DNA of 19,963 nt, taken from IMG/VR virus record IMGVR_UViG_3300014911_000574, positions 1 to 19,963 of that record; one strand, given 5' to 3'. The notes beneath the pieces were generated by a model, which was given only the letters and a program-made list of their open reading frames with translations, was not told the DNA's origin and ran no database searches. The position numbers and the translations under genes are program-made. Numbering within the stretch: the stretch's first letter is position 1; each line of letters starts with the position of its first letter. Shown here piece after piece: positions 5,361 to 19,963 of the stretch.

Positions 5361-6203
5361 CTATGCTTCAAAGATATTGTAAATAGCAACTGTTACTTTT
5401 GTTGATGGTGAAACTCTTACATTTACTTTGTCATTCTTCATAACTGTAAAGTCAAATTCCTTCCATGCATTTCTTGGAATTAACCTTCCCTCATTGAGTA
5501 ATGATATTACTTCTTGCGTCAATCCTGCAGGAATCCACTTGAGGTAACCATAGAAATCACGATCACCAGTAATTTTGATCCTAACCTTACCATCACCTTG
5601 AACTACAAGATCACTCTCGAATATATCGATAAACTCTGGAGCGTAGTAATCAACCATTAGGCCTAGCAACTTAGGTTTTTTTTCATCTATTAGTGTCTCT
5701 AGCCTTGTCTCTATATCACTAAGTCTTGAGTAAATATCTGCAAGACTATACCCTGCATATATCGATTCGATCTTTTCACTAACTTCAACTATCCTACCTT
5801 CTATTTGAGACAATGGAATATCGAATAACGTTAATCTTGATGTGTATTGTGTAATGTATGCATAGTCAATAGCCTCTGTAATCCTTACCCTAGCTTCATG
5901 ATATAGATCTGCAATGTAAATTGGATCTCCATCTTTCAAAACTCTCTTTCCAGAGATGAAACAATCATACGTGAAGTAACCATAGCCTGAATGAACTTCC
6001 TTAATCCTAGCATTTGGATTTCCTACCAAATATGCAATGTCTTTGTCAGGGATTATATCTCCAACAAGGTAACCATATGAAAAGACAGTTTGTATTCCAG
6101 ATACTCTATTATGAAGATCATCGAGAGCATCAACTACCAACTGGCCCCATCTTGTTTTTATCACTTCTCCAGATCGAGGCTTCCATAGGCCGTAGTACGA
6201 CAT
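5361..6203 (-). CDS. Putative fibre/receptor-binding protein (280 aa)
   Basis: GDIIPDKDIAYLVGNPNARIKEVH matches the GxIxPxxDxxYxxGxxxxRxxxIY fibre motif; central coiled coil; beta-rich C-terminus; SD GGTGA. Confidence 0.6.
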   Translation of the reverse strand: MSYYGLWKPRSGEVIKTRWGQLVVDALDDLHNRVSGIQTVFSYGYLVGDIIPDKDIAYLVGNPNARIKEVHSGYGYFTYDCFISGKRVLKDGDPIYIADLYHEARVRITEAIDYAYITQYTSRLTLFDIPLSQIEGRIVEVSEKIESIYAGYSLADIYSRLSDIETRLETLIDEKKPKLLGLMVDYYAPEFIDIFESDLVVQGDGKVRIKITGDRDFYGYLKWIPAGLTQEVISLLNEGRLIPRNAWKEFDFTVMKNDKVNVRVSPSTKVTVAIYNIFEA

Positions 6204-6212
6204 TTTATCACC

Positions 6213-9200
6213 TTATCTCCTCCTTACTCTATACTCTCTAATACGTTTTCTTTCTTTTCTAGCAAGGATGTACTGCATTTTCTCCATAATCATTTCATCA
6301 GTCATTCCCATTTCCTTTAGAGCCTCCTTGTATTCTTCTGGTGTAATGAGGTTGTACTCAAGCAATAGATCGAGAGTTCTCTCTCTCAAGTATCTAACGT
6401 ATGATTCACGTCTAAACTTTGCATGCAACATTCTAAGTTCAACCTCGACTGGTGTATAACCTAGTTTTGTCAATATGTCTTTCAATGTTTGATCTGTTAA
6501 GTAGCCTTTCGCGTAAGCATCAACTAGATCGTAGAAGATCCTCTCTCTTTCGTCTCGAATAGGCCTTACCTTGAAGACCTGCTTTACAATCTTCTTTTCA
6601 TCTTCTGGTAGACCTAGCTGCTCAAGTTTCTTCTGTATGAATTCTTCAGGAATTGGAACGTAATCTGCATAGCTTAACAATGTTCCTAACGTCAAGGTGT
6701 AGGCCTTACCTTCAGCCTCAAGCAGCATTTTTGCAATATCTTCTGGAACTCCTATTTTCTTCATTCCCTCGATAAACTCACGGTCTGTAATCTTTCCTCT
6801 ACGATACATTCTAATCAATGCTCTATAGATGATGTCTCTCAAGTACAGTGTTCTCGATATCTTAGCGAACGTTATTAGCAATTCAATTTCTTCTGGTCTC
6901 AATGCAAGGCCTTCTAAAGCCTTCTTGATTTCGTCATCAGTCAAAATTCCTTTCTCGTAGGCTTCAAGTAATGCTCCAATGATTCTCCTTCTTTCGTCTC
7001 TAAGAGGCTTGATCTTAAATACTTTCAAAACAATCGCTATTTCATCTTCTGGAAGTCCCAATTGTCTCAATTTCTTAAGTAGGAATTCCTCAGGTATTGC
7101 TATGTAATCTGCATAGTGTAACAATGCGGATAATGACAATGTATATGTCTTAGCTTCTGCATCAAGTATTTTCTTTGCAAGATCCTCTGGAATTCCAATT
7201 CGTCTCATTTCATTTATGAACTGTTCATCAGTTATCTTACCTCTCTGGTATAGCCTAATCAATGTTCTATATGTTAGATCTCTTAGGTATAATGTTCTTG
7301 ATAATTTAGCAAATGACATTAGCAATTCAATTTCTCCTGGTCTCAATGCTAATGCATTTAATTCAGACTTCAATTCTTCATCTCCCAAAAGACCTTTCTC
7401 ATAAGCTTCAATTAAGGCCCAAATTGTCTTTCTCCTTTCGTCTCTCAAAGGCTTGATCTTGAATACCTGCAAGACAATTTGCTTTTCATCATCTGGTAGG
7501 CCTAGTTGATCAAGCTTTTTAACTATGAATTCCTCTGGTATTGCCACATAGTCTGCATAATGCAACAATGCGCTTAACGATAAGGTGTATGTCTTAGCTT
7601 CTGCATCAAGCAATAACTTAGCGAGATTCTCTGGAATTCCTATTTCCCTCATTTTATCGATAAATTCCTGATCAGTAATCTTACCTCTTTGATACAATCT
7701 AATCAATGCTCTATAGGTAATCCTACGTAGATACAATGTTCTTTTTATCCTAGCAAATTCCTTAATGAGCTTTATTTCTTCTTGTCTTAAATCAAGAGCC
7801 TTAAGTTGATCTTCAAGATCTCTCTCTGTTATAAGTCCTTGCTCATACATTTCAATCAAGGCCCAAACCATTCTCCTTCTTTCATCTCTAAGAGGCTTGA
7901 TCTTCAATACCTCTTTGATTATTTTCTTGTCTTCCTCAGGAACTCCTAAGAATGTCAATTTAGCTTCAATGTAATCCTCTGGAAGTTCAATGTAATCTGC
8001 AAAAGATAGTATGTAACCTATCGATAGCTCATAATGGGGAGCATTTGCTTCACACACGAATTTTGCAAGTTCCTCTGGATATCCAAGCTTTTTCATTTCT
8101 TCTATGAATTGTTCTTTCGTTATTGCTCCGCGTCTTAGAGCAACAACTAAGGCCCTAACCTTTTCCCTTGCTATATACCTTTCACGTCTAATCTTTACAT
8201 ACTCCTTAATTGCATTAAGTTCGTAATCAGAAAGATAGATGATCGAGTCTTTAAACGTGTGCTCTCTAATTCCCTCGAACAAATGCTCTCTATACTTTAC
8301 TTCAACCATCGATGCTTCACTTATCTTCTTGAAGTAATCTGGTATATGTTCTGGATCGATAAGGCCCATCTCTGCAAGCTCAATAAGACCATAAACGATA
8401 CGTCTAGTTTCATCTCGCAATGGCCTTCTAAGTATTGAGAATATTGTTTGCTTTGCATCCTCGCTTGTAAATCCCCATATCTGTAATTTCGAACTTAGCC
8501 ATTGAGGATCTGGAAATACTGTATCATAGATCCTGTATAGATCGAATAGTCTCAAATCGAAGTAAAGATGTTGCGTGATTTTCTTTACAAAGTCATCACT
8601 ATATCCCTGTGCTTTAAACCATTTAATATATTCATTGAGATCGATAATGTCTTTACAGTACATTATGAACAAGTCTTTATACGATGGTATTGGTCTTGAA
8701 GCTTCAATTATCAGTTCATACTGTTCTTTCCCAAATCCGTGAAATCCAAAGTATCGATCGAGATCTTCCGCTTTGATCAATCCTCTCCAGTAAGCATTGA
8801 TTACAGTTGATGTGTCGATTATTCTTGGTCTGTATTGGTAGTTTATGACATACTGCATTGGTGTTAATATTGCTGCTGTAATGAATGCGCTTGAGATTCC
8901 GCTTACTATTGCGTCAAATTGAAAGACCTTGCTCACAAATGATTTTACACCGTCAAGTCTAACTCCAGTTCCTGCTATAGTTATTGAAGCTAAATCTAGC
9001 ATCATGTAAGTATTTAATGCAACAAATCCAAACCTTATGAGAATGTCAAATACTGCAGTCAATATTTCCTCGATTGATGTTCCCCTCATTTTCTCATGTA
9101 TTGACTTTGCAATACCTGAAAATGCTTCCAACATTGTCTTGAAAATTGTCTTGACAAGGTTAGTAATTTGTTCTACAATCCATATAAATGCTTGGTATAT

Positions 9201-10709
9201 CATTGAAGTAAATGTTTGAAGTCCTGTGAAAAACCACTTTCCAATGTTCATAAAGAAGTCATAAACTTGCTTTCCCAATGCTAAGAACGATTCAACAATC
9301 ATTCTCGGAAGATTACTTACCATTCTAGGTAAGTCCTGTGTAAGCCACTTCCATGTATTTTGCAGTGTTTCCCAAATTTTTAACAATGGATTGATGAATC
9401 CTTCCAAGAACTTACCTATGACTTGCAATTGCTGGTATACACCTTCAATTGACTTTTTAATGAACTCACCAAGCCCTATAATAGAATCGATAATCCATCT
9501 TCCAAACTCACTTATCATTGTTGGAAATTGAGCTATCGTTCTTGCTAAATTCTCGAAAAACCTCTTTATCGTTTCAAATCCTGCAGTTATTGTTTGTGCT
9601 ATTTGTGTAAAGAATGCTTGTATTCCTTGGAATGCAGATGTTATAGCATTGATAATACTTTGAAATGCAGATGACAAGGCTTGATGTAACTGAGCAAATA
9701 ATGTAGATAATGTTCTACCAATATTTTCAAAGAACGTTACAACTTGACTAAAGAATCCTTGTATGGAAGCTACAACATTTTGAAATGCAGTACTAATAAA
9801 TTGCTGGATTTGAGTAAAGAATGTCGATAATGTTCTTGCTATATTCTCAAAGAAAGTCATTACTTGACTAAAGAAACCTTGAAGTCCAGTCCAAAGTTGT
9901 TGAAATGCAGATGTTATGAACTGACTAATTTGTGTAAACAATGTAGATATTGTAGTTGCTATGTTTTGGAAGAAAGTCATTATTTGACTTACAATACCTT
10001 GGAAGAAATTCATCACGTTTTGAAATGCAGATGTAATGAATTGTTGAATTTGTGTAAAGAATGACGCTAGATTTCGACCTATCTGTTCAAAGAATGACAC
10101 TACCTGAGCAAATGCATTTTGTATTGAAGCTACAATACCTTGTAGAAAGCTCATTATCCTATTCGCGATCTCACTAAACAATGTTTGTAGTCCTTGAATT
10201 CCCTTTACTATCCAGTCAATGAATGTTCTTACGCCTGAAATTACACTATTGACTATTGTCTGAGCTGTTTGTGTAAGGTAATTGTAAACCGTTTGAAATG
10301 CAGATACTACGGCTTCCTGAATTACAGTACCAATTTGTGCTAAGGCCCTACCTATTTCCTCGAAAAACTTTGGGACTTGTTGTAATACATTCCAAATTTG
10401 ATCTAGAAATCCTGTTATTCCTCGATATACACCATCGATAATAGTTCTAAACGTTGAAACTAGTGAATCCCAACCAGATTTTAGGAAGTCATAAATTTGA
10501 TTTCTTACAGTTGTTATGAAACTCCAAATTTGGTCCCACAACCATGAAAAAGCTTTACTGATCTGTTCCCACAACCATCTAATTAGTTGGCCTAATGGAT
10601 CTGTAATACCTCCTATTTCCCATTGCTTTAGAGTATCAGGAATGAGTTCGAGCTTGAATTCCTCAAGTTTAAACTCAAGGTCTAATACCTTAATCGTTAT
10701 TTGAGACAT
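6213..10709 (-). CDS. Large repeat-rich virion protein (1498 aa); terminal fibre / tape-measure-like
   Basis: N-terminal amphipathic 40-aa repeats, central hydrophobic segment, C-terminal 148-aa repeats; largest gene, next to other structural genes, analogous to the large rudiviral fibre protein. Confidence 0.75.
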   Translation of the reverse strand: MSQITIKVLDLEFKLEEFKLELIPDTLKQWEIGGITDPLGQLIRWLWEQISKAFSWLWDQIWSFITTVRNQIYDFLKSGWDSLVSTFRTIIDGVYRGITGFLDQIWNVLQQVPKFFEEIGRALAQIGTVIQEAVVSAFQTVYNYLTQTAQTIVNSVISGVRTFIDWIVKGIQGLQTLFSEIANRIMSFLQGIVASIQNAFAQVVSFFEQIGRNLASFFTQIQQFITSAFQNVMNFFQGIVSQIMTFFQNIATTISTLFTQISQFITSAFQQLWTGLQGFFSQVMTFFENIARTLSTFFTQIQQFISTAFQNVVASIQGFFSQVVTFFENIGRTLSTLFAQLHQALSSAFQSIINAITSAFQGIQAFFTQIAQTITAGFETIKRFFENLARTIAQFPTMISEFGRWIIDSIIGLGEFIKKSIEGVYQQLQVIGKFLEGFINPLLKIWETLQNTWKWLTQDLPRMVSNLPRMIVESFLALGKQVYDFFMNIGKWFFTGLQTFTSMIYQAFIWIVEQITNLVKTIFKTMLEAFSGIAKSIHEKMRGTSIEEILTAVFDILIRFGFVALNTYMMLDLASITIAGTGVRLDGVKSFVSKVFQFDAIVSGISSAFITAAILTPMQYVINYQYRPRIIDTSTVINAYWRGLIKAEDLDRYFGFHGFGKEQYELIIEASRPIPSYKDLFIMYCKDIIDLNEYIKWFKAQGYSDDFVKKITQHLYFDLRLFDLYRIYDTVFPDPQWLSSKLQIWGFTSEDAKQTIFSILRRPLRDETRRIVYGLIELAEMGLIDPEHIPDYFKKISEASMVEVKYREHLFEGIREHTFKDSIIYLSDYELNAIKEYVKIRRERYIAREKVRALVVALRRGAITKEQFIEEMKKLGYPEELAKFVCEANAPHYELSIGYILSFADYIELPEDYIEAKLTFLGVPEEDKKIIKEVLKIKPLRDERRRMVWALIEMYEQGLITERDLEDQLKALDLRQEEIKLIKEFARIKRTLYLRRITYRALIRLYQRGKITDQEFIDKMREIGIPENLAKLLLDAEAKTYTLSLSALLHYADYVAIPEEFIVKKLDQLGLPDDEKQIVLQVFKIKPLRDERRKTIWALIEAYEKGLLGDEELKSELNALALRPGEIELLMSFAKLSRTLYLRDLTYRTLIRLYQRGKITDEQFINEMRRIGIPEDLAKKILDAEAKTYTLSLSALLHYADYIAIPEEFLLKKLRQLGLPEDEIAIVLKVFKIKPLRDERRRIIGALLEAYEKGILTDDEIKKALEGLALRPEEIELLITFAKISRTLYLRDIIYRALIRMYRRGKITDREFIEGMKKIGVPEDIAKMLLEAEGKAYTLTLGTLLSYADYVPIPEEFIQKKLEQLGLPEDEKKIVKQVFKVRPIRDERERIFYDLVDAYAKGYLTDQTLKDILTKLGYTPVEVELRMLHAKFRRESYVRYLRERTLDLLLEYNLITPEEYKEALKEMGMTDEMIMEKMQYILARKERKRIREYRVRRR
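6400..8420 (-). repeat. Coding tandem repeat, 444-bp (148-aa) period
   Basis: P[LI]RDE[RT] motif codons near 6547, 6991, 7435 and 7879 (444 apart), plus a longer diverged unit near 8410. Confidence 0.85.
9620..10140 (-). repeat. Coding tandem repeat, 120-bp (40-aa) period, ~4 units
   Basis: TGAAATGCAG at 9661, 9781, 9901 and 10021 (exact 120-bp spacing). Confidence 0.85.
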
Positions 10710-10999
10710 TATCTTCTACCTAGAATAGACGATTTAACTTGATTGTAAAAATCAACCACTCTTTTGAACTCCTTTTTAAGATCAGTATCAGAGCTTACAA
10801 ACAAATGAGCGACTGGACTAACGTAATCACCATCTATGATACGATAAGCTATCATGTAGGCCTTACCAGATGGGAACTGAGGGACTTCCGCAACTTCTAC
10901 AATTTCTATCGTTATACTTCCCTCATAATGCTTGTATCCTGCATTTATTTCTCTAGGATATAATGGTCTTTCACTTCTAGATGAACTTCTAGATGACAT
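10709..10999 (-). CDS. Hypothetical protein (96 aa), first gene of the structural operon
   Basis: Stop overlaps the start of the 1498-aa gene; purine-rich GAGTGGGA upstream. Confidence 0.75.
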   Translation of the reverse strand: MSSRSSSRSERPLYPREINAGYKHYEGSITIEIVEVAEVPQFPSGKAYMIAYRIIDGDYVSPVAHLFVSSDTDLKKEFKRVVDFYNQVKSSILGRR

Positions 11000-11063
11000 G
11001 ATCCCACTCTTTTGCTCACGTACTCAGAAGTTTTTATGTTCTTCTCTTTCCTTGAAAAACCCC

Positions 11064-11094
11064 TTAGTGTCCATGCTAGAGCTTGAGACACTAA
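11064..11094. promoter_or_regulatory. TTAGTGTC-N15-GACACTAA inverted repeat (copy 1)
   Basis: Same arms and same spacer length recur at 16620-16650. Confidence 0.7.
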
Positions 11095-11123
11095 ATAAGC
11101 GAGAACAAAAGAAATAGCAAGAC

Positions 11124-11279
11124 ATGAAGCTTATGGTAATCGTCAAAAAACGTAAAATAACTGAAAAGAGAATAGACCTGGTGTATTTACCAGGAACTAC
11201 AGTTAAAATAAAAATGTACAATCGTCGAATATATTTAACAGGACCTATTCATTACAATCAACCTCACAATTTAAAATAG
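11124..11279 (+). CDS. Small basic protein (51 aa), absent from the ORF track
   Basis: Manual translation MKLMVIVKKRKITEKRIDLVYLPGTTVKIKMYNRRIYLTGPIHYNQPHNLK; TATA-like CTAAATAA ~30 nt upstream. Confidence 0.4.
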   Translation: MKLMVIVKKRKITEKRIDLVYLPGTTVKIKMYNRRIYLTGPIHYNQPHNLK

Positions 11280-11425
11280 AAAGAAATACTTTCTATAATA
11301 TTTAATAGGTATTAATACTAGTTTACATTAAGAGAAAGACCGTACTTTCCAGAGTCCCAAGCACTTTCTGTAAAATAAATTCAGAAAAACAATGGAAAAA
11401 ATTGAGATTAAAAAGACTTTTTATT

Positions 11426-11641
11426 TTAAAACCTAAAGAGCCCTTGTCTCAATAACTTCCTAACTTCTTTAGCAAGTTCTCTCGCGTATTGATAAAAGAC
11501 ACAATTACAATTATGATCAAGAACTTCAAGACTCATTGAAATTACAATCCTCATAATATTGTTCATGATGTTACTTAGTTCTTGTTGTGTCATTGTTGGT
11601 TCTTGAGGTTTTTGTTCTGGTTTTATTTGTACCTCACTCAT
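11426..11641 (-). CDS. Hypothetical protein (71 aa)
   Basis: 4-nt overlap with the upstream gene; SD GGTGA. Confidence 0.7.
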   Translation of the reverse strand: MSEVQIKPEQKPQEPTMTQQELSNIMNNIMRIVISMSLEVLDHNCNCVFYQYARELAKEVRKLLRQGLFRF

Positions 11642-12717
11642 TTAATCACCATGTACTTTATCATTTCTACGATCTTTAAGAGGATTTCTCTATTTAGGCC
11701 TAGTCGCTCATACTTCATGACAATATCATCAACCTCAAGCTTACCCTTGTACCTTGCTCTATACGATAACTCTAGAGCAAATGCTATGTACGATTGAACT
11801 TGTATTGATGGAACGCCATATTGATTAACAATCTTCTTTACTTGTCTAATTATGTTAGCCTGATGAAGTTGGTGTTTAGTTCCTTGGTAATGCAATTGCT
11901 CTGATCGTGAAAGTAAGAGATATCCAGTGTACAACGGTTCTACATGCTTCCAAAAGTCCTTGATTGTATTGTCTAGAAAGTCCTCAAGCTCTGGTTTTAT
12001 CTCAGCATCAACGTCAATCCATCGTGAGTAGTCCCACGACGTTACTTCCCACCACGACTCTCCAACGAATATAGACTCAAGTTTCGATACTGTCTTCCAA
12101 TCTTCTATCGATCTAGCATCAAATACTGAATATTGTTCGATTTCTTCAGTCCATGCTGAAACATCCCAACACGCTACCCCCCAGTAACCAGACTTCAAAA
12201 CTTTCCCTTCAGTTAAAGAGATGATCGACTCGATCGTATTGAGGTAATGCTCTGCAAATTCATGTCTTCTCAATTGCTCTCTCACAAGAAAGATGTATTG
12301 TTTCAAAGTACTTGCATGGTGTCTATACTCTAGAGCATCATGTTTTGTAGTGTGGTATGTCAAATCCCAAATCAATTGCTCGAGATCCGTAGGTGTTATT
12401 GTCGGGGGGTCGTATATTGAAGTGTCATACCTTGACATTCCATACCTTGCTTTTTCAATCTTTTCGAATGGAATAGTAAATTGATCTCTAAAATCGATTT
12501 TAAAGAATGTAAATTCTATCGATGGTAAGTGTGCTAGTAAGTTCAAGTTAAGATCAAGTACAAACCTAAAAAGTACATTATATGATATCAACCATTGAAT
12601 TAATTCCTGCAATGCAGTAAATCTATAGTATGTCGATAAGATACCTCTAAATGTCGTACACTTTTCAAGGTAAATTAGCTTTCTCCAAATTAGCTCTTTA
12701 AATGGTAGGTATGACAT
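11638..12717 (-). CDS. Minor virion protein with C-terminal MCP-like domain
   Basis: C-terminal VKKIVNQYGVPSIQVQSYIAFALEL...KYERLGLNREILLKI aligns to the MCP; aromatic x4 repeats YGMSRYDTSIYD, WGVACWDVSAW, WEVTSWDYSRW. Confidence 0.75.
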   Translation of the reverse strand: MSYLPFKELIWRKLIYLEKCTTFRGILSTYYRFTALQELIQWLISYNVLFRFVLDLNLNLLAHLPSIEFTFFKIDFRDQFTIPFEKIEKARYGMSRYDTSIYDPPTITPTDLEQLIWDLTYHTTKHDALEYRHHASTLKQYIFLVREQLRRHEFAEHYLNTIESIISLTEGKVLKSGYWGVACWDVSAWTEEIEQYSVFDARSIEDWKTVSKLESIFVGESWWEVTSWDYSRWIDVDAEIKPELEDFLDNTIKDFWKHVEPLYTGYLLLSRSEQLHYQGTKHQLHQANIIRQVKKIVNQYGVPSIQVQSYIAFALELSYRARYKGKLEVDDIVMKYERLGLNREILLKIVEMIKYMVIK

Positions 12718-12718
12718 A

Positions 12719-13780
12719 TTACCATCTACATTTTTCTATGAATTTCTTATAGACTTTCTTGTAATCAAAGTTAAGCGCAGTATTGTATGCCTCGATACAC
12801 ATGTTCATGTAAAGATCCTTATTGTTCTTTCTAATATCGATTGCTCTTAACATTGCATTTGCAAGTTCCTCAGGATCGTATAAATGCATGACAAAGTACT
12901 GTTCTGCAGTTGTCTTCCAATACTCGATATGATCATATTCAAAGTAAATAGCGCATTTTTCATTTGTAAACTCGATTAGAGGTTTCATTTTACAACATAC
13001 TACTGGTCTTCCCATTGCTAAAGTCTCGAGAACTGGAAGTCCAAAGCCCTCGCATGCAGATGGAAAGACGAGGTAATCACATGCTCCTAATAGTCCAAGA
13101 ACTTCCTCATGACTTCTTGATCCAAAGTCTCCAACGATGTAAACATTAGGTCTTTTGAATAGTTCTTGTCTTCTCAATTCAGTATGTAGGAGCAAGACAA
13201 AATCATTAGGGGCTTTTTCATTCAAGATGTCAATAGCTTGCATTAGACGATCAAGTTGTTTTCGATGATCATCACGACCAACATAAACGAAAATAACACG
13301 ATCCTTGAAGTCTTGTCTTAACTTTTTCTGGTATTTCTCTGCAAGTTTCTTTGCTCTTTCAACTTCCTCAAAATCGATAGCATGGTGTATAACATCGATT
13401 ACCCTGAGATTTGCTTTTTCAAGACATTCTTTTGTAAAGTATGAATTTGCGATAAAGTCGATGTACTTTGTTGCATGCCATCTTGCTAAATGAGGATATG
13501 GAATACCCTCGATGGTCGCATAAACAAAAGCTCGATTTCTAGTAGATTGTTTAGCCTCGATAAAAACTGGAGCTATGTCGATCAACCATGTTGGATTAGC
13601 AATTACAAACCATAGATATGCATTACCTAGTTTTTGAATTACATCAAATAATGAGATGTATGGTTTTACCAGAACTTCATGACCATGATTTATAAAACAT
13701 TTTTCAATCAACTTAGCTTGTTCATAAAGTGAAACGGCCCTAAAGTATGTCAAGACAAGTCTCATGATAAAACACCTCAA
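12719..13780 (-). CDS. GT-B (GT4-like) glycosyltransferase
   Basis: IANSYFT, YVGR..HRK, FPSACEGFGLPVLETLAMGRPVV. Confidence 0.92.
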   Translation of the reverse strand: MRCFIMRLVLTYFRAVSLYEQAKLIEKCFINHGHEVLVKPYISLFDVIQKLGNAYLWFVIANPTWLIDIAPVFIEAKQSTRNRAFVYATIEGIPYPHLARWHATKYIDFIANSYFTKECLEKANLRVIDVIHHAIDFEEVERAKKLAEKYQKKLRQDFKDRVIFVYVGRDDHRKQLDRLMQAIDILNEKAPNDFVLLLHTELRRQELFKRPNVYIVGDFGSRSHEEVLGLLGACDYLVFPSACEGFGLPVLETLAMGRPVVCCKMKPLIEFTNEKCAIYFEYDHIEYWKTTAEQYFVMHLYDPEELANAMLRAIDIRKNNKDLYMNMCIEAYNTALNFDYKKVYKKFIEKCRW

Positions 13781-14079
13781 TCAAGTATGACTTCGATATA
13801 CAGTTTTGGATTTTTAGCGTGAGGATCTATTTCAATTCGATATTTGTATCCTTGCAATCTAAATTGAGCATAACGAGAAATGGCTTGTAATTGTCTTACT
13901 ACATCTTGTTTCGCAATTTCTTTATCAGTTAATACCTCAATTTCAGTCCCATTAGATAACCTAATTATGTTTCCTTTCACTTCAACGACTTTTAATCCTT
14001 CTTTTTCCTCATGTTTTTCTTCCTCTTTCATTTCTTCAACATTATTTTCAGATCTTATTTCGATATCCGAATACGTCAT
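13777..14079 (-). CDS. Hypothetical protein (100 aa); start reassigned to 14079
   Basis: SD GTGAGGGGA just upstream of ATG 14079; the longer ORF-track start would overlap the MCP gene and its promoter. Confidence 0.7.
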   Translation of the reverse strand: MTYSDIEIRSENNVEEMKEEEKHEEKEGLKVVEVKGNIIRLSNGTEIEVLTDKEIAKQDVVRQLQAISRYAQFRLQGYKYRIEIDPHAKNPKLYIEVILD

Positions 14080-14151
14080 GGAAAGTCCCCTCACAAAAAA
14101 TGAGATATAGTGAGTTACTATATATGTCATATTGTCTCTATATTTCACATG

Positions 14152-14159
14152 TTTATATA
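14152..14159 (+). promoter_or_regulatory. TATA box of the MCP gene
   Basis: TTTATATA ~37 nt upstream of ATG 14196; no SD, so the leader is short or absent. Confidence 0.5.
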
Positions 14160-14195
14160 CATTGTTCTTTTTCATGTTATTCTCGGGTCTAGCGT

Positions 14196-14564
14196 ATGCC
14201 ATATAGATCCTACACAATAAGAATCAAGAAATGGAGTTCAAAGTTCGATCCTGATACAGTACGTAACAGATTTGCTCAAGTAAAAGACATTGCAAATGAT
14301 CAAGCTCAAGAACAATTTGCAAGACTAGTAGACTTTGAACAGGCCGTTAAGCATAGACTTAATGAACTTGGAGTTCCAGTAATTCAAATGCCATTTTACC
14401 TAAACGTTGCTCGACAAATCTATAGAGCAATGACAAGACACACAGGAAAGACATTAGAAACTGAAGTCAAGGTTATTAAAGCAACATGGACTGCAAGAGG
14501 ACTAGACCCTGCAATCATCGATGAAATCATCAAGTTAATGATCGGTTACGTCCCAACATATTAA
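14196..14564 (+). CDS. Major capsid protein, SIRV2-type (Adnaviria) fold
   Basis: RSYTIRIKKWSSKF resembles SIRV2 MCP RSYSQRYAKWQAKF; LNELGV...FY.NVARQIYR and GLDPAIIDEI match the helical bundle; monocistronic with a poly-T terminator. Confidence 0.88.
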   Translation: MPYRSYTIRIKKWSSKFDPDTVRNRFAQVKDIANDQAQEQFARLVDFEQAVKHRLNELGVPVIQMPFYLNVARQIYRAMTRHTGKTLETEVKVIKATWTARGLDPAIIDEIIKLMIGYVPTY

Positions 14565-14606
14565 AGGGCCTAACATAGCTTGACGTAAAGCCCAATTAAA
14601 CTCATT

Positions 14607-14621
14607 CCTTTTTTCTTTTTC
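14607..14621 (+). terminator. Archaeal oligo-T terminator after the MCP gene
   Basis: CCTTTTTTCTTTTTT ~45 nt after the stop. Confidence 0.6.
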
Positions 14622-14823
14622 AAACCCATGAACTTACACTAATACATATTATATTCTATATTATTTTTTCAGGATTGAATTCTCTTTTCACTTATTTTAA
14701 AATTTGTATTTTACATTTAAAATAACTTCATCACCTCACGAAACACTAGCATGAACGCTACAGTTTGCGAAAGGTAACTTAAATTAACTGTGTCAGTAAT
14801 GACAGTGGCGATGGTAGGTAATG

Positions 14824-14839
14824 GAGAAAAGTTTATAAA
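14824..14839 (+). promoter_or_regulatory. BRE + TATA promoter
   Basis: GAGAAAAG-TTTATAAA ~35 nt upstream of ATG 14875. Confidence 0.65.
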
Positions 14840-14874
14840 TTTGGTAACGCGTATCTCTTTTGGGGAACGCGCCC

Positions 14875-15432
14875 ATGAGAAAGAAAGTAAACCTAAATTC
14901 CTCCTATGAAATGACACCTAGAAAAGCCCGATTACTTATTTTAACTCACACAGTTAAAATAACTAGTCAAGATAATGTTAAGTCTTCTACGAAAAGAAAA
15001 AGAAAATGGGTTTTAGTTCAAGAAACTTTAGAGGAAGCTCAAGAATTGTTTAAAGTTCAATTTGAAAAGATTGCAGATGGAGTTTACATAACAAAACAAA
15101 GACATTATGTTGGAAAATTAAGACAATTAGCTAATTTCTTACAAACAAAATTACCAAATGTAACAATATTCTTTGTAAAACAAGTAAAACCAACTACTGT
15201 TGGATTCTTTGAAGAAAAGGAAGAAAGACAAATAACAAGGAAGTTAATGTTTGAAGGTAAAGAAATTGATGAGAGTGTCATTAAGCAATGGATTAGAGAA
15301 ATTTACAATGATTTTGACTTTGCTTTAAAGAAATATGGAAAGGAAAGAGGATTATGGAAATCTGTAGGATCTGGTAGAGCCGAAAAGATCTACTTAATCA
15401 TGAAATGGTTAATTGAGTACATGGGCTTATAG
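14875..15432 (+). CDS. Basic hypothetical protein (~185 aa); start uncertain (14860/14875/14911)
   Basis: Long Lys/Arg-rich ORF downstream of a strong promoter. Confidence 0.7.
   Translation: MRKKVNLNSSYEMTPRKARLLILTHTVKITSQDNVKSSTKRKRKWVLVQETLEEAQELFKVQFEKIADGVYITKQRHYVGKLRQLANFLQTKLPNVTIFFVKQVKPTTVGFFEEKEERQITRKLMFEGKEIDESVIKQWIREIYNDFDFALKKYGKERGLWKSVGSGRAEKIYLIMKWLIEYMGL
14936..14962. repeat. Palindrome TTATTTTAACT-CACAC-AGTTAAAATAA built from an ITR word
   Basis: 11-bp perfect arms; 14948-14963 is identical to ITR 75-90 (16 nt). Confidence 0.75.
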
Positions 15433-15443
15433 CGATTCCATAG

Positions 15444-15836
15444 GTGATGGATATTCCAAGGTTTAAACGTCAAGCTAAGTACAAGGTAATAAGTGATGAC
15501 AATTTCTGGTTAGAGGATTTAAAGACCATGAACGAAAAGACCATTAAGATTGTAACATTAGCTAAAGTTCCCATCGAGTTTGAAGCTAAGGTGATTGCAG
15601 TCGGGATTTGTGATTTTGGGTCGATGTTCATTTACTTTATGATGAAGAAAGACAATGAAATCATTATGTTCAAATGCTACTACCCAAGAAATGTTGTCGA
15701 ACAAGTCATGAAAGACTTAAACTATGATTCAATAGAGCGTTTTTACGAATGGATAGGAAAGACTATGAAATTCAGAAGAAGACCATATGTTGGATCTCAA
15801 GGTTGTAGGTATTACCCAATCCCAATTTCAAGCTAG
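15444..15836 (+). CDS. Hypothetical protein (130 aa), possibly OB-fold nucleic-acid binding
   Basis: Beta-beta-beta-helix-EWIGKTMKF-beta pattern; the fold is a guess. Confidence 0.65.
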   Translation: MMDIPRFKRQAKYKVISDDNFWLEDLKTMNEKTIKIVTLAKVPIEFEAKVIAVGICDFGSMFIYFMMKKDNEIIMFKCYYPRNVVEQVMKDLNYDSIERFYEWIGKTMKFRRRPYVGSQGCRYYPIPISS

Positions 15837-16172
15837 CATTTTTCTTAGGTCTTTTATAAACTTCATTCTATCCCTTGTAATCCTTATTATTTCCCTTGCT
15901 TGATTCATCATTTCTTTTGCAAAGACAATATCATCACTTTCAAGTCTTTTAATTGCAACATCGATTAGTGATATTGCTCTGTCTAGGTTCATGATCAATT
16001 CATCTATCATTGTATGACGTTTTATCGTCATTATCTTTTTTGCTTTCCATAGGGCCTTGTATATTGTCGATCTTGAACATTTCAATTCTTGCATTATAAG
16101 AGCAATGGAATAACCCTTCTGGTAAAGTTCAACGATTTTTTGCTCTAACTCCGTAAGTCTTACCTCTCTCAT
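15828..16172 (-). CDS. HTH DNA-binding protein with C-terminal coiled coil
   Basis: LTELEQKIVELYQKGYSIALIMQELKCSRSTIYKAL. Confidence 0.8.
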   Translation of the reverse strand: MREVRLTELEQKIVELYQKGYSIALIMQELKCSRSTIYKALWKAKKIMTIKRHTMIDELIMNLDRAISLIDVAIKRLESDDIVFAKEMMNQAREIIRITRDRMKFIKDLRKMLA

Positions 16173-16518
16173 GTTTTTTCACCATTTCTAAACAATATTT
16201 ATAGAATACACACTTTTCATTGCAAAGACCATTCTTCCTAAGCTCACAAACATCGTATAGAAGCTTGAGGATATCAAAAAGTCTCTTTCTAGCCCATGCT
16301 TTTTCCCTCTTTAAATCTCTAAACTTGTCTTCATACAACTTATGAGCTAGAGGTCTCAAATCCTCTCTTACCCTCGATATATAATCTTGAAACTCGATGT
16401 GTAATTGTCTTTCCTTTTCCTTCAATTCCTGAAGTAACTTCAATTCTTTCAAGGCCTCTCTAAAGTAGTACTCAAATGGGTTTTTCAAAATGTCATATAT
16501 CCTACTTTCCATAGACAT
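16129..16518 (-). CDS. Coiled-coil protein with Cys cluster (possible metal binding)
   Basis: Charged helical body; C-x6-C-x3-C-x4-C. Confidence 0.7.
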   Translation of the reverse strand: MSMESRIYDILKNPFEYYFREALKELKLLQELKEKERQLHIEFQDYISRVREDLRPLAHKLYEDKFRDLKREKAWARKRLFDILKLLYDVCELRKNGLCNEKCVFYKYCLEMVKKHERGKTYGVRAKNR

Positions 16519-16569
16519 ATTTTATCTGTAGAAAGACCGTTCATTACCTTGTATTTAAGTGTAATGTCT

Positions 16570-16583
16570 TGTTTACGTAAACA
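16570..16583. promoter_or_regulatory. Perfect 14-bp palindrome TGTTTACGTAAACA
   Basis: In the divergent intergenic region 16519-16668. Confidence 0.5.
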
Positions 16584-16619
16584 CACAATGAAAGATCGCT
16601 TTTTCCATACAATCATCGT

Positions 16620-16650
16620 TTAGTGTCGCAGCCTATAAACCAGACACTAA
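16620..16650. promoter_or_regulatory. TTAGTGTC-N15-GACACTAA inverted repeat (copy 2) bracketing a TATA box
   Basis: Spacer contains CTATAAAC ~30 nt upstream of ATG 16669. Confidence 0.7.
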
Positions 16651-16668
16651 ATAGTAAAAAATGGGAGT

Positions 16669-17082
16669 ATGAACTCACAAAAAAGTGATTACCTAACCGA
16701 GATAATTCAGAAGTTCTTAAAATTTAGAGAAATGAGAAGATCAGGATTAACACTTGAAATTCCATTGAGCGACAGACGTTACTGGATCGATTGGACTTAT
16801 GTTCCTGCAGATACGAAAGATGGTAAGAAGTATTACGGGCCTTACTATCGTCTACGATGGATTGAAAGTGGTAAGAAAAAGTGTAAGTATTTAGGAAAGG
16901 CCCCGAAAGAACATGTTCATTTGATAAACGAATTATCATCAACATTTCAGGATCTGGAAGAAACTTTCGAGAACATTCTAAAACTTCTCATGAAATTCAA
17001 TTACCTTTACAACAAGTTCATGAACTTGTACGAAACATACAAGGAATTGATGAAAGAATACATTGAGAAGATCCAGAAGTAA
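16669..17082 (+). CDS. Putative DNA-binding protein (GPY...GK...YLGK motif) with coiled coil
   Basis: YYGPYYRLRWIESGKKKCKYLGK, a motif common in small proteins of archaeal mobile elements; SD GGGAG. Confidence 0.7.
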   Translation: MNSQKSDYLTEIIQKFLKFREMRRSGLTLEIPLSDRRYWIDWTYVPADTKDGKKYYGPYYRLRWIESGKKKCKYLGKAPKEHVHLINELSSTFQDLEETFENILKLLMKFNYLYNKFMNLYETYKELMKEYIEKIQK

Positions 17083-17115
17083 AAAACATTGGTTTTTTTA
17101 TTTCTCTTTTTTCTT

Positions 17116-17373
17116 TTAATGAAACTCACATTTCACAATTTGATGTAGTCTGTGTGCTAGAAAGTCAAAGAGCATTATCAATTCTGAAATCGAAAGTGAG
17201 TCAATATCAATCGAGAGATTAAGACTGAAGTATGACATTAAAAGTTGAATAGTTTCAATCAACTTTTCCCGAATGTAATGTGGCGATATCTTCCCAAATT
17301 GATACTGAACGATTAATTCATACATTTTAGAGCATTTTTCTATAATTTCATTAACTTCTTTTAGTTTCAACAT
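17116..17373 (-). CDS. Hypothetical helical protein (85 aa)
   Basis: SD GAGGG; minus-strand TATA TTTATAAG at ~17408-17415. Confidence 0.65.
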   Translation of the reverse strand: MLKLKEVNEIIEKCSKMYELIVQYQFGKISPHYIREKLIETIQLLMSYFSLNLSIDIDSLSISELIMLFDFLAHRLHQIVKCEFH

Positions 17374-17444
17374 ACTCTTTTACCCTCATTCTGAGTGTCT
17401 CTGAAAACTTATAAATTTTATAATAGGTAATATAGTGGGAGAGT

Positions 17445-18014
17445 ATGTCTCAAGAAAGTCATTTCCACAACATCAACTACTACAACAAGACGATAGGCTT
17501 AACACTACCGAAAAACGTCGTGGAAACGATAAATCATCTTATTACAGAAGGGAGGTTTGCTTCCAGAAAAGAGTTTATTATAAAGGCCATAGAGTATTGG
17601 ATAGAAACTTACATGAAGACAAGCGATGATAAAGAAAGGTTTGCTCAAATTAGGGCTGGTATTCCATCTTTTATCTTTGAAAAAATATCTAAGTTGAATG
17701 TTCAAGACATACACAATTTCGTCTATGATGCAGTAATTTCGTTTCTCGTAAAGTGTCTTAACGACATTATCGATGAACAAAGTAGGATCGTTGAATTGAA
17801 AACAAGACCGAAGATCAGGTATAAACAAGGTGAAAAAAGAGAGATGCAGTTAATAACAGTGCACATGCCAAAATACATTGTTCACATACTTGATGAACTG
17901 GTGAAAGAAGGTCTCTCACCTTCCAGAGCAGAGCTCATTAGAGAAGCAGTGAGGAAATACATTAATGAACGAATTTTCTCAGAAGTTGAAGACATGATCA
18001 TGCTAGGCCCTTAA
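17445..18014 (+). CDS. Multi-domain ribbon-helix-helix (CopG-like) regulator
   Basis: RHH units IGLTLPKNVVETINHLITEGRFASRKEFIIKAI and ITVHMPKYIVHILDELVKEGLSPSRAELIREAV, plus a degenerate middle unit. Confidence 0.88.
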   Translation: MSQESHFHNINYYNKTIGLTLPKNVVETINHLITEGRFASRKEFIIKAIEYWIETYMKTSDDKERFAQIRAGIPSFIFEKISKLNVQDIHNFVYDAVISFLVKCLNDIIDEQSRIVELKTRPKIRYKQGEKREMQLITVHMPKYIVHILDELVKEGLSPSRAELIREAVRKYINERIFSEVEDMIMLGP

Positions 18015-18077
18015 ATTCATGATTTTCTTTTTCCCTTTTTATTTTTATTTTATCTGTTTGTTTTAAATACTCTTAAT

Positions 18078-18096
18078 TCTGAGTTTTAAACTCAGA
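18078..18096. promoter_or_regulatory. Palindrome TCTGAGTTT-T-AAACTCAGA between TATA and start codon
   Basis: Perfect 9-bp arms; TTTAAATA at 18062-18069; ATG at 18101. Confidence 0.65.
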
Positions 18097-18100
18097 GATT

Positions 18101-18328
18101 ATGGTCGATCGAAAAACCCAATTCCTACATGCGTTATTCGAAATAGCTCAAATATCGAAGAATCTTCAAACATCAATTCAAATATACCTAAGGAAAAAAG
18201 ATATTGACATTGTAAACGAGTTGATAGCTCTTAAAATTCCTGTTAAGCTTACAAGGAACAAGTCATTATACATCTCATGGAAAAACGCGGATGATATTGT
18301 CAAGAAACTAAAACATATCTTAAAGTGA
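18101..18328 (+). CDS. Hypothetical protein (75 aa), paralogue of 18333..18566
   Basis: Shared motif LYISWKNADDIV / IYVSWRKCLDIL. Confidence 0.7.
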   Translation: MVDRKTQFLHALFEIAQISKNLQTSIQIYLRKKDIDIVNELIALKIPVKLTRNKSLYISWKNADDIVKKLKHILK

Positions 18329-18332
18329 GATC

Positions 18333-18566
18333 ATGAAACTTAATGTAAAAGACATTGAGTTTCAACTTCTAAAGCTCATGGAGACATGCGCTAAACATAA
18401 GATCTCACTTGAAATTGTTACTAGTCCTGCAAAACATAAAGTGTTGATCGAGATAGCAAGTAAGTTAGGCCTTACAATTGAAAAGCGAAAGTTTATCTAC
18501 GTCTCATGGAGAAAATGTCTTGATATTCTTACCAGATACAATAATCATGAGGTTGGTAAACCATGA
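18333..18566 (+). CDS. Hypothetical protein (77 aa), paralogue of 18101..18328
   Basis: Same shared motif; 4-nt spacing from the upstream gene. Confidence 0.7.
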   Translation: MKLNVKDIEFQLLKLMETCAKHKISLEIVTSPAKHKVLIEIASKLGLTIEKRKFIYVSWRKCLDILTRYNNHEVGKP

Positions 18567-18751
18567 GTAGATCATCAGGTTGTGAATATCGTTACAAGGT
18601 TAGGATAAGGGATAAGAACAATCCTGAACTTTTCTATGAGGTCTTCTTGTGTAGATTGACGAATAAAGAATGTACTTACAAACCATCGAAATGTCCATTA
18701 CTTAAAAAGAAACGGTTAGGCCTTAGCGAAATAACAAGTTTCTTTGAGTAA
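18563..18751 (+). CDS. Small Cys-rich (Zn-binding?) protein (62 aa)
   Basis: Four Cys (C...CRLTNKEC..KPSKCP); 4-nt overlap; SD GAGGT. Confidence 0.65.
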   Translation: MSRSSGCEYRYKVRIRDKNNPELFYEVFLCRLTNKECTYKPSKCPLLKKKRLGLSEITSFFE

Positions 18752-18797
18752 TTTAAAAGGCCCATACATCACAAATATACTTCATTTATTTACACCA

Positions 18798-19439: not shown

Positions 19440-19545
19440 ACAAACATTATTAAAACTATTTTTTCATAAGCTTATAATTTAGACAATGTATGTTCGAGTA
19501 AAAAGCATATAAATACCACATAATACTGTCATGTAGGGAAATGTA

Positions 19546-19833: not shown

Positions 19834-19840
19834 AATTCAA

Positions 19841-19963
19841 TTTGTATTTTATTTTATTTATTTGTTTTGTTTGGTTATTTTAACTGTGTCATTCTTCATT
19901 TTTTGTTTTGAGACTTTATGTTCATGTGTTTAAGACTTTTTTCTTAACGCCCCGTGGGGTTAA
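19841..19963 (-). repeat. Right inverted terminal repeat (123 bp)
   Basis: Exact reverse complement of 1..123. Confidence 0.97.

What the first reader, a model, noticed from the sequence alone, without database searches (positions are those of the whole stretch)
11064..16650. Identical TTAGTGTC-N15-GACACTAA sites 5.5 kb apart link the structural operon to a regulator switch
Two 31-bp sites have identical 8-bp arms, the same 15-nt spacer length and the same following ATA, but different spacer sequences. One brackets the TATA box of the 16669 DNA-binding gene. The other lies upstream of the 9-kb structural operon and a hidden 51-aa ORF. A lone half-site lies at 493-500. Inference: operators of one dimeric factor, plausibly the 16669 product or the HTH protein, acting as an early-to-late switch. 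Recombination sites are less likely because the spacers differ and no recombinase is seen.
Basis: partly seen in the sequence, partly recalled or inferred. Interest (0 to 1): 0.7.

Follow-up and report, generated by a model that had tools for sequence, protein, structure and literature searches.

The report
Operator pair of an archaeal-virus autoregulator
The two identical palindromes are real and are most likely docking sites for the small protein encoded next to one of them, an undescribed regulator-and-operator pair shared by a lineage of uncultured rod-shaped archaeal viruses; the proposed tie to the structural genes is not conserved.

Summary
TTAGTGTC-N15-GACACTAA occurs at 11064-11094 and 16620-16650 (0 of 200 shuffles). 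The spacers are unrelated (3 of 15 positions), and site 2 frames the TATAAA upstream of the 16669 gene. The window is a complete 20-kb linear genome (123-nt inverted terminal repeats) of an uncultured rudivirus-like archaeal virus.

Relatives decide the interpretation. The 16669 product (gp137) belongs to a small uncharacterised family: a helix, a three-stranded beta-sheet with invariant GPYYxLRW..G..YLG, then a long helix. In 10 of 12 family lineages with upstream DNA, the family gene is preceded by a TTAG-type palindrome, usually framing a TATA box. Relatives hold 23 perfect sites in 44 kb against 0.025 expected. In divergent members the arms change symmetrically (TTAGTGG, TTAGGG).

The sites are therefore best read as operators of a gp137 dimer. 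Site 2 gives autoregulation, probably repression.

The "structural operon / early-late switch" link is not conserved. Two relatives with the gp96 homologue have no convincing site there. Site 1 lies in a lineage-specific 425-nt spacer, 29 nt upstream of a 51-codon ORF with gene-like codon usage.

The regulator family is new; the regulatory logic is known (SvtR, Aca8).

The parts
16620..16650 (.). Site 2: operator TTAGTGTC-N15-GACACTAA framing BRE/TATA of the gp137 gene
   Evidence: The same layout (palindrome around a TATA box, upstream of the family gene) is seen in relatives.
16634..16639 (+). TATA box (TATAAA) in the spacer of site 2, 30 nt upstream of the ATG at 16669
   Evidence: Read from the sequence. 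In relatives a TATA-like box sits at a fixed offset of +20 to +22 inside the palindrome.
16669..17082 (+). gp137, the candidate operator-binding protein: N-terminal helix, three-stranded beta-sheet (residues 38-77; invariant GPYYRLRW, G68, YLG), long C-terminal helix (80-136)
   Evidence: The same beta-domain is the C-terminal domain of response regulators P0022 and P0081 and of the GIY-YIG protein P0017.
11064..11094 (.). Site 1: second operator, with the same arms and spacing as site 2 but no TATA box in its spacer
11092..11099 (+). TATA-like TAAATAAG overlapping the right arm of site 1, centred about 26-28 nt upstream of the ORF51 ATG; fits a leaderless or short-leader transcript
   Evidence: Read from the sequence. 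That it acts as a promoter element is inferred.
11124..11279 (+). ORF51, a 51-codon gene not called by either source's gene caller; likely second target of the operator
   Evidence: Its codon-usage score is +0.14, within the range of the virus's small genes (0.06-0.37) and above 15 spurious ORFs (-0.41 to +0.03). No homologue and no Pfam hit. Not called by the source gene callers.
11031..11038 (-). TATA-like CATAAAAA preceded by a purine-rich BRE-like stretch, about 35 nt upstream of the gp96 ATG; candidate promoter of the minus-strand gene row. Site 1 lies about -56 to -86 from the predicted start.
   Evidence: Read from the sequence. Oligo-T runs after the gp71 stop (about 11385-11432, minus strand) suggest termination upstream. 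All of this is inferred.
10709..10999 (-). gp96, first gene of the 9.3-kb minus-strand row (gp96, gp1498, gp280, GT4, methyltransferase and others)
   Evidence: Homologues lie in L023 and L031 without a conserved operator upstream.
5690..5722 (.). Possible third, degenerate site TTAGTGTC-N19-CACTAA inside the 280-aa gene; its core spacing is 2 nt longer
   Evidence: Function doubtful.
17392..17399 (.). One-mismatch half-site (GACACTCA on the minus strand), 18 nt upstream of the ATG of the minus-strand 85-aa gene (17373). This is the same distance as site 2 to the gp137 ATG.
   Evidence: A single 8-mer is within chance expectation.

Best explanation
The two 31-bp palindromes are operators for the product of 16669-17082 (gp137). 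gp137 belongs to an uncharacterised family built as helix, three-stranded beta-sheet, then long helix. The proposed mechanism has four steps.

1. The protein dimerises through its helices and places one beta-domain on each TTAGTG half-site (inferred).
2. Site 2 has its arms directly flanking BRE and TATA of the protein's own gene. Its right arm lies between TATA and the predicted transcription start. Occupancy should therefore keep TBP/TFB/RNA polymerase off the promoter, giving negative autoregulation (inferred from position and from precedent).
3. Site 1 puts a second transcription unit under the same protein. The most likely target is the uncalled 51-codon gene 29 nt downstream on the + strand, whose TATA-like box overlaps the right arm.
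4. An additional SvtR-like effect on the divergent gp96-gp1498 gene row is possible but unsupported by relatives.

What is shown: the sites exist, the architecture is as described, and the protein family and the palindrome co-occur and change together. What is inferred: binding, dimerisation, the sign of regulation, and the target of site 1.
For: **Significance of the sites.** 0 of 200 shuffles match; only the arms and spacing are conserved.

**Co-occurrence with the protein.**
- gp137 is the only protein shared with L013/L014.
- Every closer family locus carries 1-5 perfect TTAGTG..CACTAA palindromes. One always lies just upstream of, or over the 5' end of, the family gene.
- Relatives hold 23 sites in 44.3 kb of non-redundant sequence, against 0.025 in shuffles.

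**Fixed promoter geometry.** In relatives most spacers hold a TATA-like box starting near +20 to +22, and the site ends 6-26 nt before a start codon.

**Symmetric arm changes in divergent members.**
- P0006 and P0010 (37% identical; both GPYACLRW) have arms TTAGTGGC/GCCACTAA.
- P0013 (GPYAYLRW) has two tandem TTAGGG-N20-CCCTAA sites, one around the TATA box and one around the ATG.

**Reverse control.** 118 IMG/VR loci (1.1 Mb), each with a single chance match to the pattern, encode no family member.

**Protein features.**
- The beta-domain alone models at pLDDT 84.
- The most conserved block is the beta-sheet.
- The same domain sits where the output domain normally is in two response regulators, and follows a GIY-YIG nuclease domain.
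- A 57-residue C-terminal helix is modelled at pLDDT 86-92.

**Precedent.** Most archaeal viral regulators are autorepressors (PMC5569661). Early-gene motifs whose regulator gene carries the motif itself are described in PMC11065993.
Against: - No binding data exist.
- Most relatives were found through the protein, so co-occurrence is partly by construction. The reverse control only partly offsets this.
- Foldseek and PDB sequence searches give no significant DNA-binding relative. The full-length model is only moderate (pLDDT 72).
- gp137 itself does not reach the Pfam thresholds for DUF6788 or DUF1678.
- RHH proteins are also shared between the window and L023, so they are not excluded as binders.
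- Core-to-core distances range from 25 to 39 bp, which a rigid dimer would not tolerate.
- Site 1 has no TATA box in its spacer, unlike nearly all sites in relatives.
- The arms never overlap BRE/TATA and keep a fixed geometry, which could equally suit an activator.
- ORF51 is an orphan supported only by codon usage.
Confidence: 0.6

Rival explanations
1. Early-to-late switch, the first reader's idea and SvtR-like in logic. The same factor autoregulates at site 2, and from site 1 it represses or activates the divergent gp96-gp1498 gene row, timing virion-associated gene expression.
For: - Site 1 lies about 25 nt upstream of a BRE/TATA-like element for gp96.
- Terminator-like T runs after gp71 imply that the row needs its own promoter.
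- SIRV1 SvtR binds its own promoter and also a site about 80 nt upstream of the TATA of the structural gene gp30 (PMC5569661).
Against: - Not conserved. L023 has no spacer before the gp96 homologue, and only a 1-mismatch site about 260 nt upstream of the preceding gene (0.77 such sites expected by chance).
- L031 has no TTAGTG upstream of its gp96 homologue.
- In relatives the sites sit on promoters of small, non-structural genes.
- The major capsid gene (14196-14564) has no site.
Confidence: 0.25
2. A different protein binds the arms: the tandem RHH protein gp189 (17445-18014), the HTH_7 protein gp114, or a host factor. gp137 would then be merely one of the regulated genes.
For: - RHH proteins are the classic archaeal viral regulators.
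- RHH homologues are shared with L023.
- gp137 has no significant match to any solved DNA-binding fold.
Against: - The arms change symmetrically together with the divergence of the gp137 family.
- No gp114 homologue is found in the relatives' DNA held here. L013/L014 show no RHH homologue at all.
- The hosts presumably differ (GC 33% against 40-51%), which argues against a single host factor.
- Most relative contigs are short, so absence of RHH genes there cannot be proven.
Confidence: 0.12
3. Activator or clamp. The dimer binds both arms while TBP/TFB occupy the framed BRE/TATA. It stabilises the bent pre-initiation complex, so that motif-bearing promoters depend on gp137.
For: - The arms flank but never overlap BRE/TATA, and they keep a fixed offset to TATA across unrelated spacers.
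- The two spacing classes differ by about one helical turn: 25-26 bp against 35-39 bp centre to centre.
- Several framed TATA boxes look weak, for example TTTATC and TTAAAA.
Against: - The right arm lies at about -20 to -7 from the predicted start, inside the region covered by RNA polymerase. Known archaeal activators bind upstream of BRE (textbook knowledge; PMC5569661).
- Positive autoregulation would need a separate source of the first protein.
Confidence: 0.12
4. The sites are recombination, inversion, replication or packaging sites, or DNA/RNA hairpins, rather than transcription operators.
For: They are perfect inverted repeats. As single-stranded DNA they fold at -6 to -7.4 kcal/mol, z-scores -3.6 to -4.5.
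Against: - No recombinase is present, and the spacers are unrelated.
- The independently assembled ENA contig is identical over the stretch holding both sites.
- In relatives the stems are 7 bp with 28-nt loops and fold no better than shuffles (L013, z -0.8).
- The predicted transcription start lies downstream of the right arm, so the palindrome is not in the mRNA at site 2.
- Rfam gives no match.
Confidence: 0.03

Closest known systems
SvtR (gp08) of the rudivirus SIRV1 and its targets (PMC5569661; Guilliere et al. 2009, as cited there)
   Same: A small regulator of a rod-shaped archaeal virus. It binds an imperfect inverted repeat in its own promoter (autorepression) and a second site upstream of the promoter of a large structural gene.
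   Different: - SvtR is a ribbon-helix-helix protein. gp137 shows no RHH hit and models as a three-stranded sheet between two long helices.
- The operator sequences are unrelated.
- The second target here is not conserved in relatives.
Aca8-type early / anti-defence gene regulatory motifs, and the SMV2 gp37 leucine-zipper candidate with inverted repeats overlapping BRE (PMC11065993)
   Same: - A virus-specific conserved sequence surrounds the BRE/TATA of several small genes.
- The regulator's own gene carries the motif.
- A coiled-coil protein is the only product shared between distant genomes that carry the motif.
   Different: - TTAGTG and CACTAA do not occur in that paper's supplementary files.
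- gp137 has no tblastn match in the INPHARED phage/archaeal-virus records at E<=1.
- gp137 has a beta-sheet domain in addition to its helices.
- Early timing and anti-defence function are untested here.
- In the window only two promoters carry the motif.
F55 of SSV1 (PMC5569661)
   Same: An autoregulated viral repressor whose sites overlap core-promoter elements of early genes and of its own gene.
   Different: F55 has an RHH fold and binds tandem direct repeats (ATAGATAG), not a split palindrome.
Pfam DUF6788 (PF20586) and DUF1678 (PF07913)
   Same: - They share the GPY..LRW..G..KYLGK beta-hairpin motif.
- Remote family members reach or approach these models: P0085 at E 8e-10; P0013 is listed as DUF6788.
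   Different: - gp137 and its close relatives fall below both gathering thresholds.
- Neither family has a described function; no paper in the library mentions either.
UBP, the ucm-binding nucleoid-associated protein of Sulfolobus (PDB 9efe/9eff; PMC12141716)
   Same: A small beta-rich, sequence-specific DNA-binding protein of thermophilic archaea. It is listed by both the fold search and the profile search.
   Different: The similarity is not significant (Foldseek E 0.6-3.4, TM 0.47-0.50; hmmsearch E about 3). It is a lead only.

Membership tests
Rudivirus-like filamentous archaeal virus (Adnaviria) | Major capsid protein of the SIRV2 type | tested here: met
   Window 14196-14564 matches PF12193 Sulf_coat_C at E 4.4e-10, 40.2 bits against a cutoff of 25.2. 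It is 24-27% identical to rudivirus coat proteins.
Rudivirus-like filamentous archaeal virus (Adnaviria) | Linear dsDNA genome with inverted terminal repeats | tested here: met
   Perfect 123-nt inverted repeats lie at 1-123 and 19841-19963. The window is the whole contig.
Ribbon-helix-helix viral regulators (SvtR / AvtR / F55 type) | RHH fold in the operator-binding protein | tested here: not met
   gp137 has no RHH Pfam or PHROG hit. It models as helix, three strands, helix. A separate RHH protein, gp189, does exist.
Autoregulated viral transcription factor with a palindromic operator | Operator overlapping or framing the regulator gene's own core promoter | tested here: met
   Site 2 frames TATAAA 30 nt upstream of the ATG. 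The same is true in 10 of 12 family lineages.
Autoregulated viral transcription factor with a palindromic operator | Sequence-specific binding of the protein to the operator, with an effect on transcription | not testable with these tools
   Needs EMSA or footprinting and in vitro transcription.
Aca-type early / anti-defence gene cassette (PMC11065993) | One conserved regulatory sequence around BRE/TATA shared by several genes of a genome, including the regulator's own gene | tested here: met
   Relatives carry 4-5 sites per locus. The window carries only two, or three with the degenerate site.
Aca-type early / anti-defence gene cassette (PMC11065993) | Immediate-early expression and anti-defence activity of the downstream genes | not testable with these tools
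   No expression data are available. The downstream genes have no informative Pfam hits.
Pfam DUF6788 / DUF1678 | Score at or above the family's gathering threshold | tested here: not met
   gp137 scores 18.1 bits on DUF1678 against a cutoff of 25, and gets no DUF6788 hit. Remote relatives P0085 and P0013 do match DUF6788.
Site-specific recombination sites | Recombinase gene, and an identical crossover core in both sites | tested here: not met
   No recombinase catalytic domain is present. The spacers share 3 of 15 positions.
Structured RNA or terminator hairpin | Transcribed, stable, conserved stem-loop | tested here: not met
   Rfam gives no match. L013's 7-bp arms with a 28-nt spacer fold no better than shuffles. 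Site 2 lies upstream of the predicted transcription start.

The most novel reading that the evidence does not exclude
gp137 founds a new class of archaeal transcription factor. It would be a beta-sheet DNA reader (DUF6788-like), held by coiled-coil helices, that grips two half-sites on either side of BRE/TATA. Two spacing classes, one helical turn apart, would let it either exclude or trap the TBP-bent promoter.

In this virus lineage it would act as the master autoregulator of cassettes of small accessory genes, possibly anti-defence genes, in the way Aca proteins do. The same DNA-reading domain would have been recruited as an output domain by cellular response regulators.
Probability: 0.3. 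Interest if true: 0.7.

Novelty: new variant of a known kind. Interest (0 to 1): 0.5.

Why it matters
- **Few regulators are known.** The 2017 review read here (PMC5569661) treats only a handful of characterised DNA-binding regulators of archaeal viruses, four of them RHH proteins. A conserved regulator-operator pair with a different predicted fold would add a new DNA-binding module.
- **A function for two unknown domains.** It would give a first functional handle on DUF6788/DUF1678-like domains, which also sit in cellular response regulators.
- **A way to find co-regulated genes.** The motif TTAG(T/G)G..C(A/C)CTAA around a TATA box could mark co-regulated, possibly early or anti-defence, genes in uncultured viruses.
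- **A probe of promoter geometry.** A palindrome that frames BRE/TATA at fixed geometry would make a neat tool for studying archaeal pre-initiation complex assembly.
- **Limits.** If it is only an ordinary autorepressor, the finding is a solid annotation, not a surprise.

Tried and rejected
**Close or cultured relatives.**
- Megablast of 10000-18000 against INPHARED found nothing. Neither did tblastn of gp359 or gp137.
- IMG/VR scans by protein returned only the window itself.
- GTDB genomes gave no match.

**Exact N15 pattern in IMG/VR.** Seven other contigs each carry one copy, consistent with chance.

**Spacer length against helix length.** A pairwise alignment suggested a 21-aa insertion in the long-spacer relatives. 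It vanished in the multiple alignment, so I dropped the idea.

**Fold assignment.** Foldseek searches of the full-length and beta-domain models against PDB found nothing with E<=0.001; the best were 0.067 and 1.4. The PDB sequence search found only GCN4-like coiled-coil similarity at E>=0.07.

**Hairpin or RNA element.** Folding energies are modest and Rfam and tRNA searches found nothing.

**ORF51 homologues.** None turned up in relatives, in the 5.8-billion-protein search, or in Pfam.

**Conservation of site 1 upstream of gp96 homologues.** Not found.

**Shared 11-mer near both sites.** AGAAAGACCGT is present. However, 11-mer repeats are common by chance in 20 kb and it is absent from relatives. 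I kept it only as a side note.

**L022.** This GC-rich distant member shows no recognisable operator.

Full report
**What the window is.** The 19,963-base window is a whole contig (IMG/VR UViG 3300014911_000574). It has perfect 123-nt inverted terminal repeats. An independently assembled ENA contig of 19,999 nt is 100% identical over window 6669-19963, the stretch compared. GC content is 30-39%. The genome encodes:
- a major capsid protein of the rudivirus type at 14196-14564 (PF12193, E 4.4e-10; 24-27% identical to coat proteins of Sulfolobales rudiviruses);
- two GT4 glycosyltransferases, a methyltransferase and a phosphodiesterase-like protein;
- a tandem RHH protein and an HTH_7 protein;
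- a 1498-aa repeat protein.

It has no nucleotide match among deposited viruses. It is therefore a complete genome of an uncultured rudivirus-like archaeal virus, and reading its promoters as BRE/TATA promoters is justified.

**The observation.** TTAGTGTC-N15-GACACTAA occurs exactly twice, at 11064-11094 and 16620-16650. No further copy appears with up to 3 mismatches, and none of 200 shuffles gave a match. The spacers agree at 3 of 15 positions, so only the arms and the spacing are kept.
- Site 2 reads arm, GCAGCC, TATAAA (16634-16639), CCA, arm. It ends 18 nt before the ATG of the 137-aa gene.
- Site 1 lies in a 425-nt gap between two minus-strand genes. It is 65 nt from the ATG of gp96 (10999) and 29 nt from the ATG of a 51-codon + strand ORF.
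- A looser third site, TTAGTGTC-N19-CACTAA at 5690-5722, lies inside a gene.
- The lone half-site at 493-500 is within chance.

**Relatives.** The 137-aa protein (gp137) has one distant homologue in the large protein index: P0002, 32% identical. P0002's contigs L013 and L014 have 45% GC and share no other protein with the window. Yet they carry 3-4 copies each of TTAGTG-N30/31-CACTAA. All but one frame a TATA-like box a short way upstream of a start codon; one copy sits directly before the gp137 homologue.

A metagenome scan with the two-protein alignment gave seven further loci. Every clear homologue locus has 1-5 perfect sites, again always including one at the homologue's own 5' end. Counted over non-redundant relatives, there are 23 sites in 44.3 kb against 0.025 in shuffles.

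The architecture is fixed:
- arms TTAGTGT and ACACTAA;
- in most sites, a TATA-like box starting near +20 to +22;
- the right core 16 nt after the TATA start;
- a start codon 6-26 nt after the site.

L020 and L023 belong to the window's own lineage. They share the capsid protein (37%), both glycosyltransferases, the methyltransferase, RHH proteins, gp96 (42%), the giant protein (33%) and gp359.

**Divergent members track the operator.** An exhaustive profile search found about 110 family members, only 7 of them at E<1e-10. Their contigs show the following.
- P0008: TTAGTGTT..AACACTAA around TTTATATT, ending 6 nt before the ATG.
- P0004: a cut contig with the TATA box and the right arm in place.
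- P0006 and P0010: 37% identical to each other, and both have GPYACLRW where the others have GPYY/F. Both carry arms TTAGTGGC/GCCACTAA, a symmetric change at arm position 7.
- P0003 and P0005: the palindrome overlaps the 5' end of the ORF.
- P0013, a DUF6788 member: two tandem sites TTAGGG-N20-CCCTAA, one around TTTTTTATA and one around the ATG. This is a symmetric change at position 5, with the short spacing class also seen in the window.
- P0012 (a gene inside an operon) and the GC-rich L022: nothing recognisable.

In total, 10 of 12 lineages with upstream DNA carry a TTAG-type palindrome; one of the ten is only partly visible. As a reverse control, 118 IMG/VR loci (1.1 Mb) that each hold a single chance match to the long-spacer pattern encode no family member.

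**The protein.** AlphaFold with the family alignment gives helix 2-34, three antiparallel strands 38-77 and helix 80-136 (pLDDT 72). The sheet modelled alone with 32 sequences reaches pLDDT 84. The invariant residues all lie in the sheet: GPYYRLRW, G68 and YLG.

There is no significant structural or sequence neighbour in PDB. The Sulfolobus DNA-binding protein UBP recurs at non-significant scores. The same sheet motif forms the C-terminal domain of two response regulators (P0022, P0081) and follows a GIY-YIG nuclease domain (P0017). Those are positions where DNA-binding output domains normally sit.

Remote members match DUF6788 and, weakly, DUF1678. No paper in the library mentions either family.

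**Mechanism.** The arms are conserved, symmetric and co-vary with the adjacent protein family. The best reading is therefore that a gp137 dimer binds one half-site per beta-domain.

With TATA centred about 26 nt upstream of the transcription start, the right arm lies at about -20 to -13 in the window and about -15 to -7 in relatives. The left arm lies just upstream of BRE. A protein bound there should exclude TFB/RNA polymerase. Together with the rule that most archaeal viral regulators are autorepressors (PMC5569661), this favours negative autoregulation.

Two features leave room for an activating or clamping role. The arms never overlap BRE/TATA. The centre-to-centre distances also fall into two classes about one helical turn apart: 25-26 bp, and 35-39 bp with a mode at 36. 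The spread of 35-39 bp implies flexibly tethered DNA-binding domains.

**What site 1 controls.** Its spacer has no TATA box.
- On the + strand, a TATA-like TAAATAAG (11092-11099) overlaps the right arm. It is centred 26-28 nt before the ATG of ORF51.
- ORF51's codon usage (+0.14) matches the virus's small genes (0.06-0.37). It exceeds all 15 spurious ORFs tested (-0.41 to +0.03), while the antisense ORF scores -0.21. ORF51 has no homologue.
- On the minus strand, a BRE/TATA-like element (CATAAAAA, 11038-11031) lies about 35 nt before the gp96 ATG. That places site 1 at roughly -56 to -86. T runs after the gp71 stop look like a terminator. This resembles SvtR's distal site at the SIRV1 gp30 promoter.
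- However, the arrangement is not conserved. In L023 the gp71-like and gp96-like genes abut, and only a 1-mismatch site lies about 260 nt upstream of the gp71-like gene, with 0.77 such sites expected by chance. In the AT-rich relative L031 the gp96 homologue has no TTAGTG upstream.

Site 1 plus ORF51 therefore looks like a "motif + small gene" cassette of the kind seen in relatives, inserted between gp71 and gp96. An effect on the structural row is possible but unsupported.

**Comparison and novelty.** The logic matches known systems:
- SvtR: own promoter plus a structural-gene promoter;
- F55;
- the Aca8-type early-gene motifs of PMC11065993. That paper also proposes a coiled-coil protein (SMV2 gp37) binding inverted repeats at BRE.

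The motif TTAGTG/CACTAA does not occur in that paper's supplements. gp137 has no match in deposited viral genomes. The protein is not RHH or HTH. The finding is thus a new protein family and operator within a known regulatory scheme.

**Verdict.** The operator reading, with gp137 as the binder, is well supported by comparative evidence. The sign of regulation and the target of site 1 are inferred. The early-to-late switch and the recombination readings are not supported.

Noticed in passing
window 1-123 and 19841-19963: Perfect 123-nt inverted terminal repeats: the window is a complete or near-complete linear genome. An ENA assembly of the same virus is 36 nt longer (19,999 nt).
   Followed up: partly
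window 6213-10709 (minus strand): The 1498-aa protein has four 120-nt (40-aa) tandem units at 9681-10160 and three to four 444-nt (148-aa) units at about 6493-7910. Its N-terminal third is about 22% identical to tape-measure proteins of tailed phages, which is odd for a rod-shaped archaeal virus. L023 has a 1665-aa homologue.
   Followed up: partly
window 11333-11395 and 16530-16592: Both intergenic regions that hold the palindromes also share AGAAAGACCGT and a CATTGT block about 45 nt away at nearly equal spacing. Read on the minus strand, these lie downstream of TATA-like boxes. They may be a second promoter type (gp129-HTH operon, and a long leader into the gp96 row). The pair is absent from relatives, and a shared 11-mer is not significant genome-wide.
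   Followed up: partly
window 5690-5722: A third, imperfect palindrome TTAGTGTC-N19-CACTAA lies inside the 280-aa gene. Its core spacing is 2 nt longer than at sites 1 and 2.
   Followed up: partly
window 17392-17399: A one-mismatch half-site (GACACTCA on the minus strand) lies exactly 18 nt upstream of the ATG of the minus-strand 85-aa gene. This is the same distance as site 2 to the gp137 ATG. No left arm is present.
   Followed up: no
L153 53-125: The distant family member P0013 has two tandem operators with altered arms (TTAGGG-N20-CCCTAA). One frames the TATA box and the other frames the start codon.
   Followed up: partly
L013, L016-L020, L023 (8-15 nt after each site): A conserved TTCGGGG / TCGGGG block follows the right arm in the 45-48% GC relatives. 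It is probably the start-site region plus a Shine-Dalgarno-like sequence.
   Followed up: no
P0022, P0081, P0017 (hits): The GPY..LRW..KYLGK beta-domain occurs as the C-terminal domain of response-regulator receiver proteins and of a GIY-YIG nuclease. This suggests a widespread, unnamed DNA-binding module related to DUF6788 and DUF1678.
   Followed up: partly
window 17445-18014: The 189-aa protein has a C-terminal RHH domain (PF01402, E 1.3e-13), and a PHROG family matches it in two stretches. In L023 the homologous region is split into two small RHH genes (50 and 53 aa).
   Followed up: no
window 11380-11432 (minus strand): Several T4-T6 runs directly follow the gp71 stop. This looks like an archaeal oligo-T terminator separating gp71 from the gp96 gene row.
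   Followed up: no
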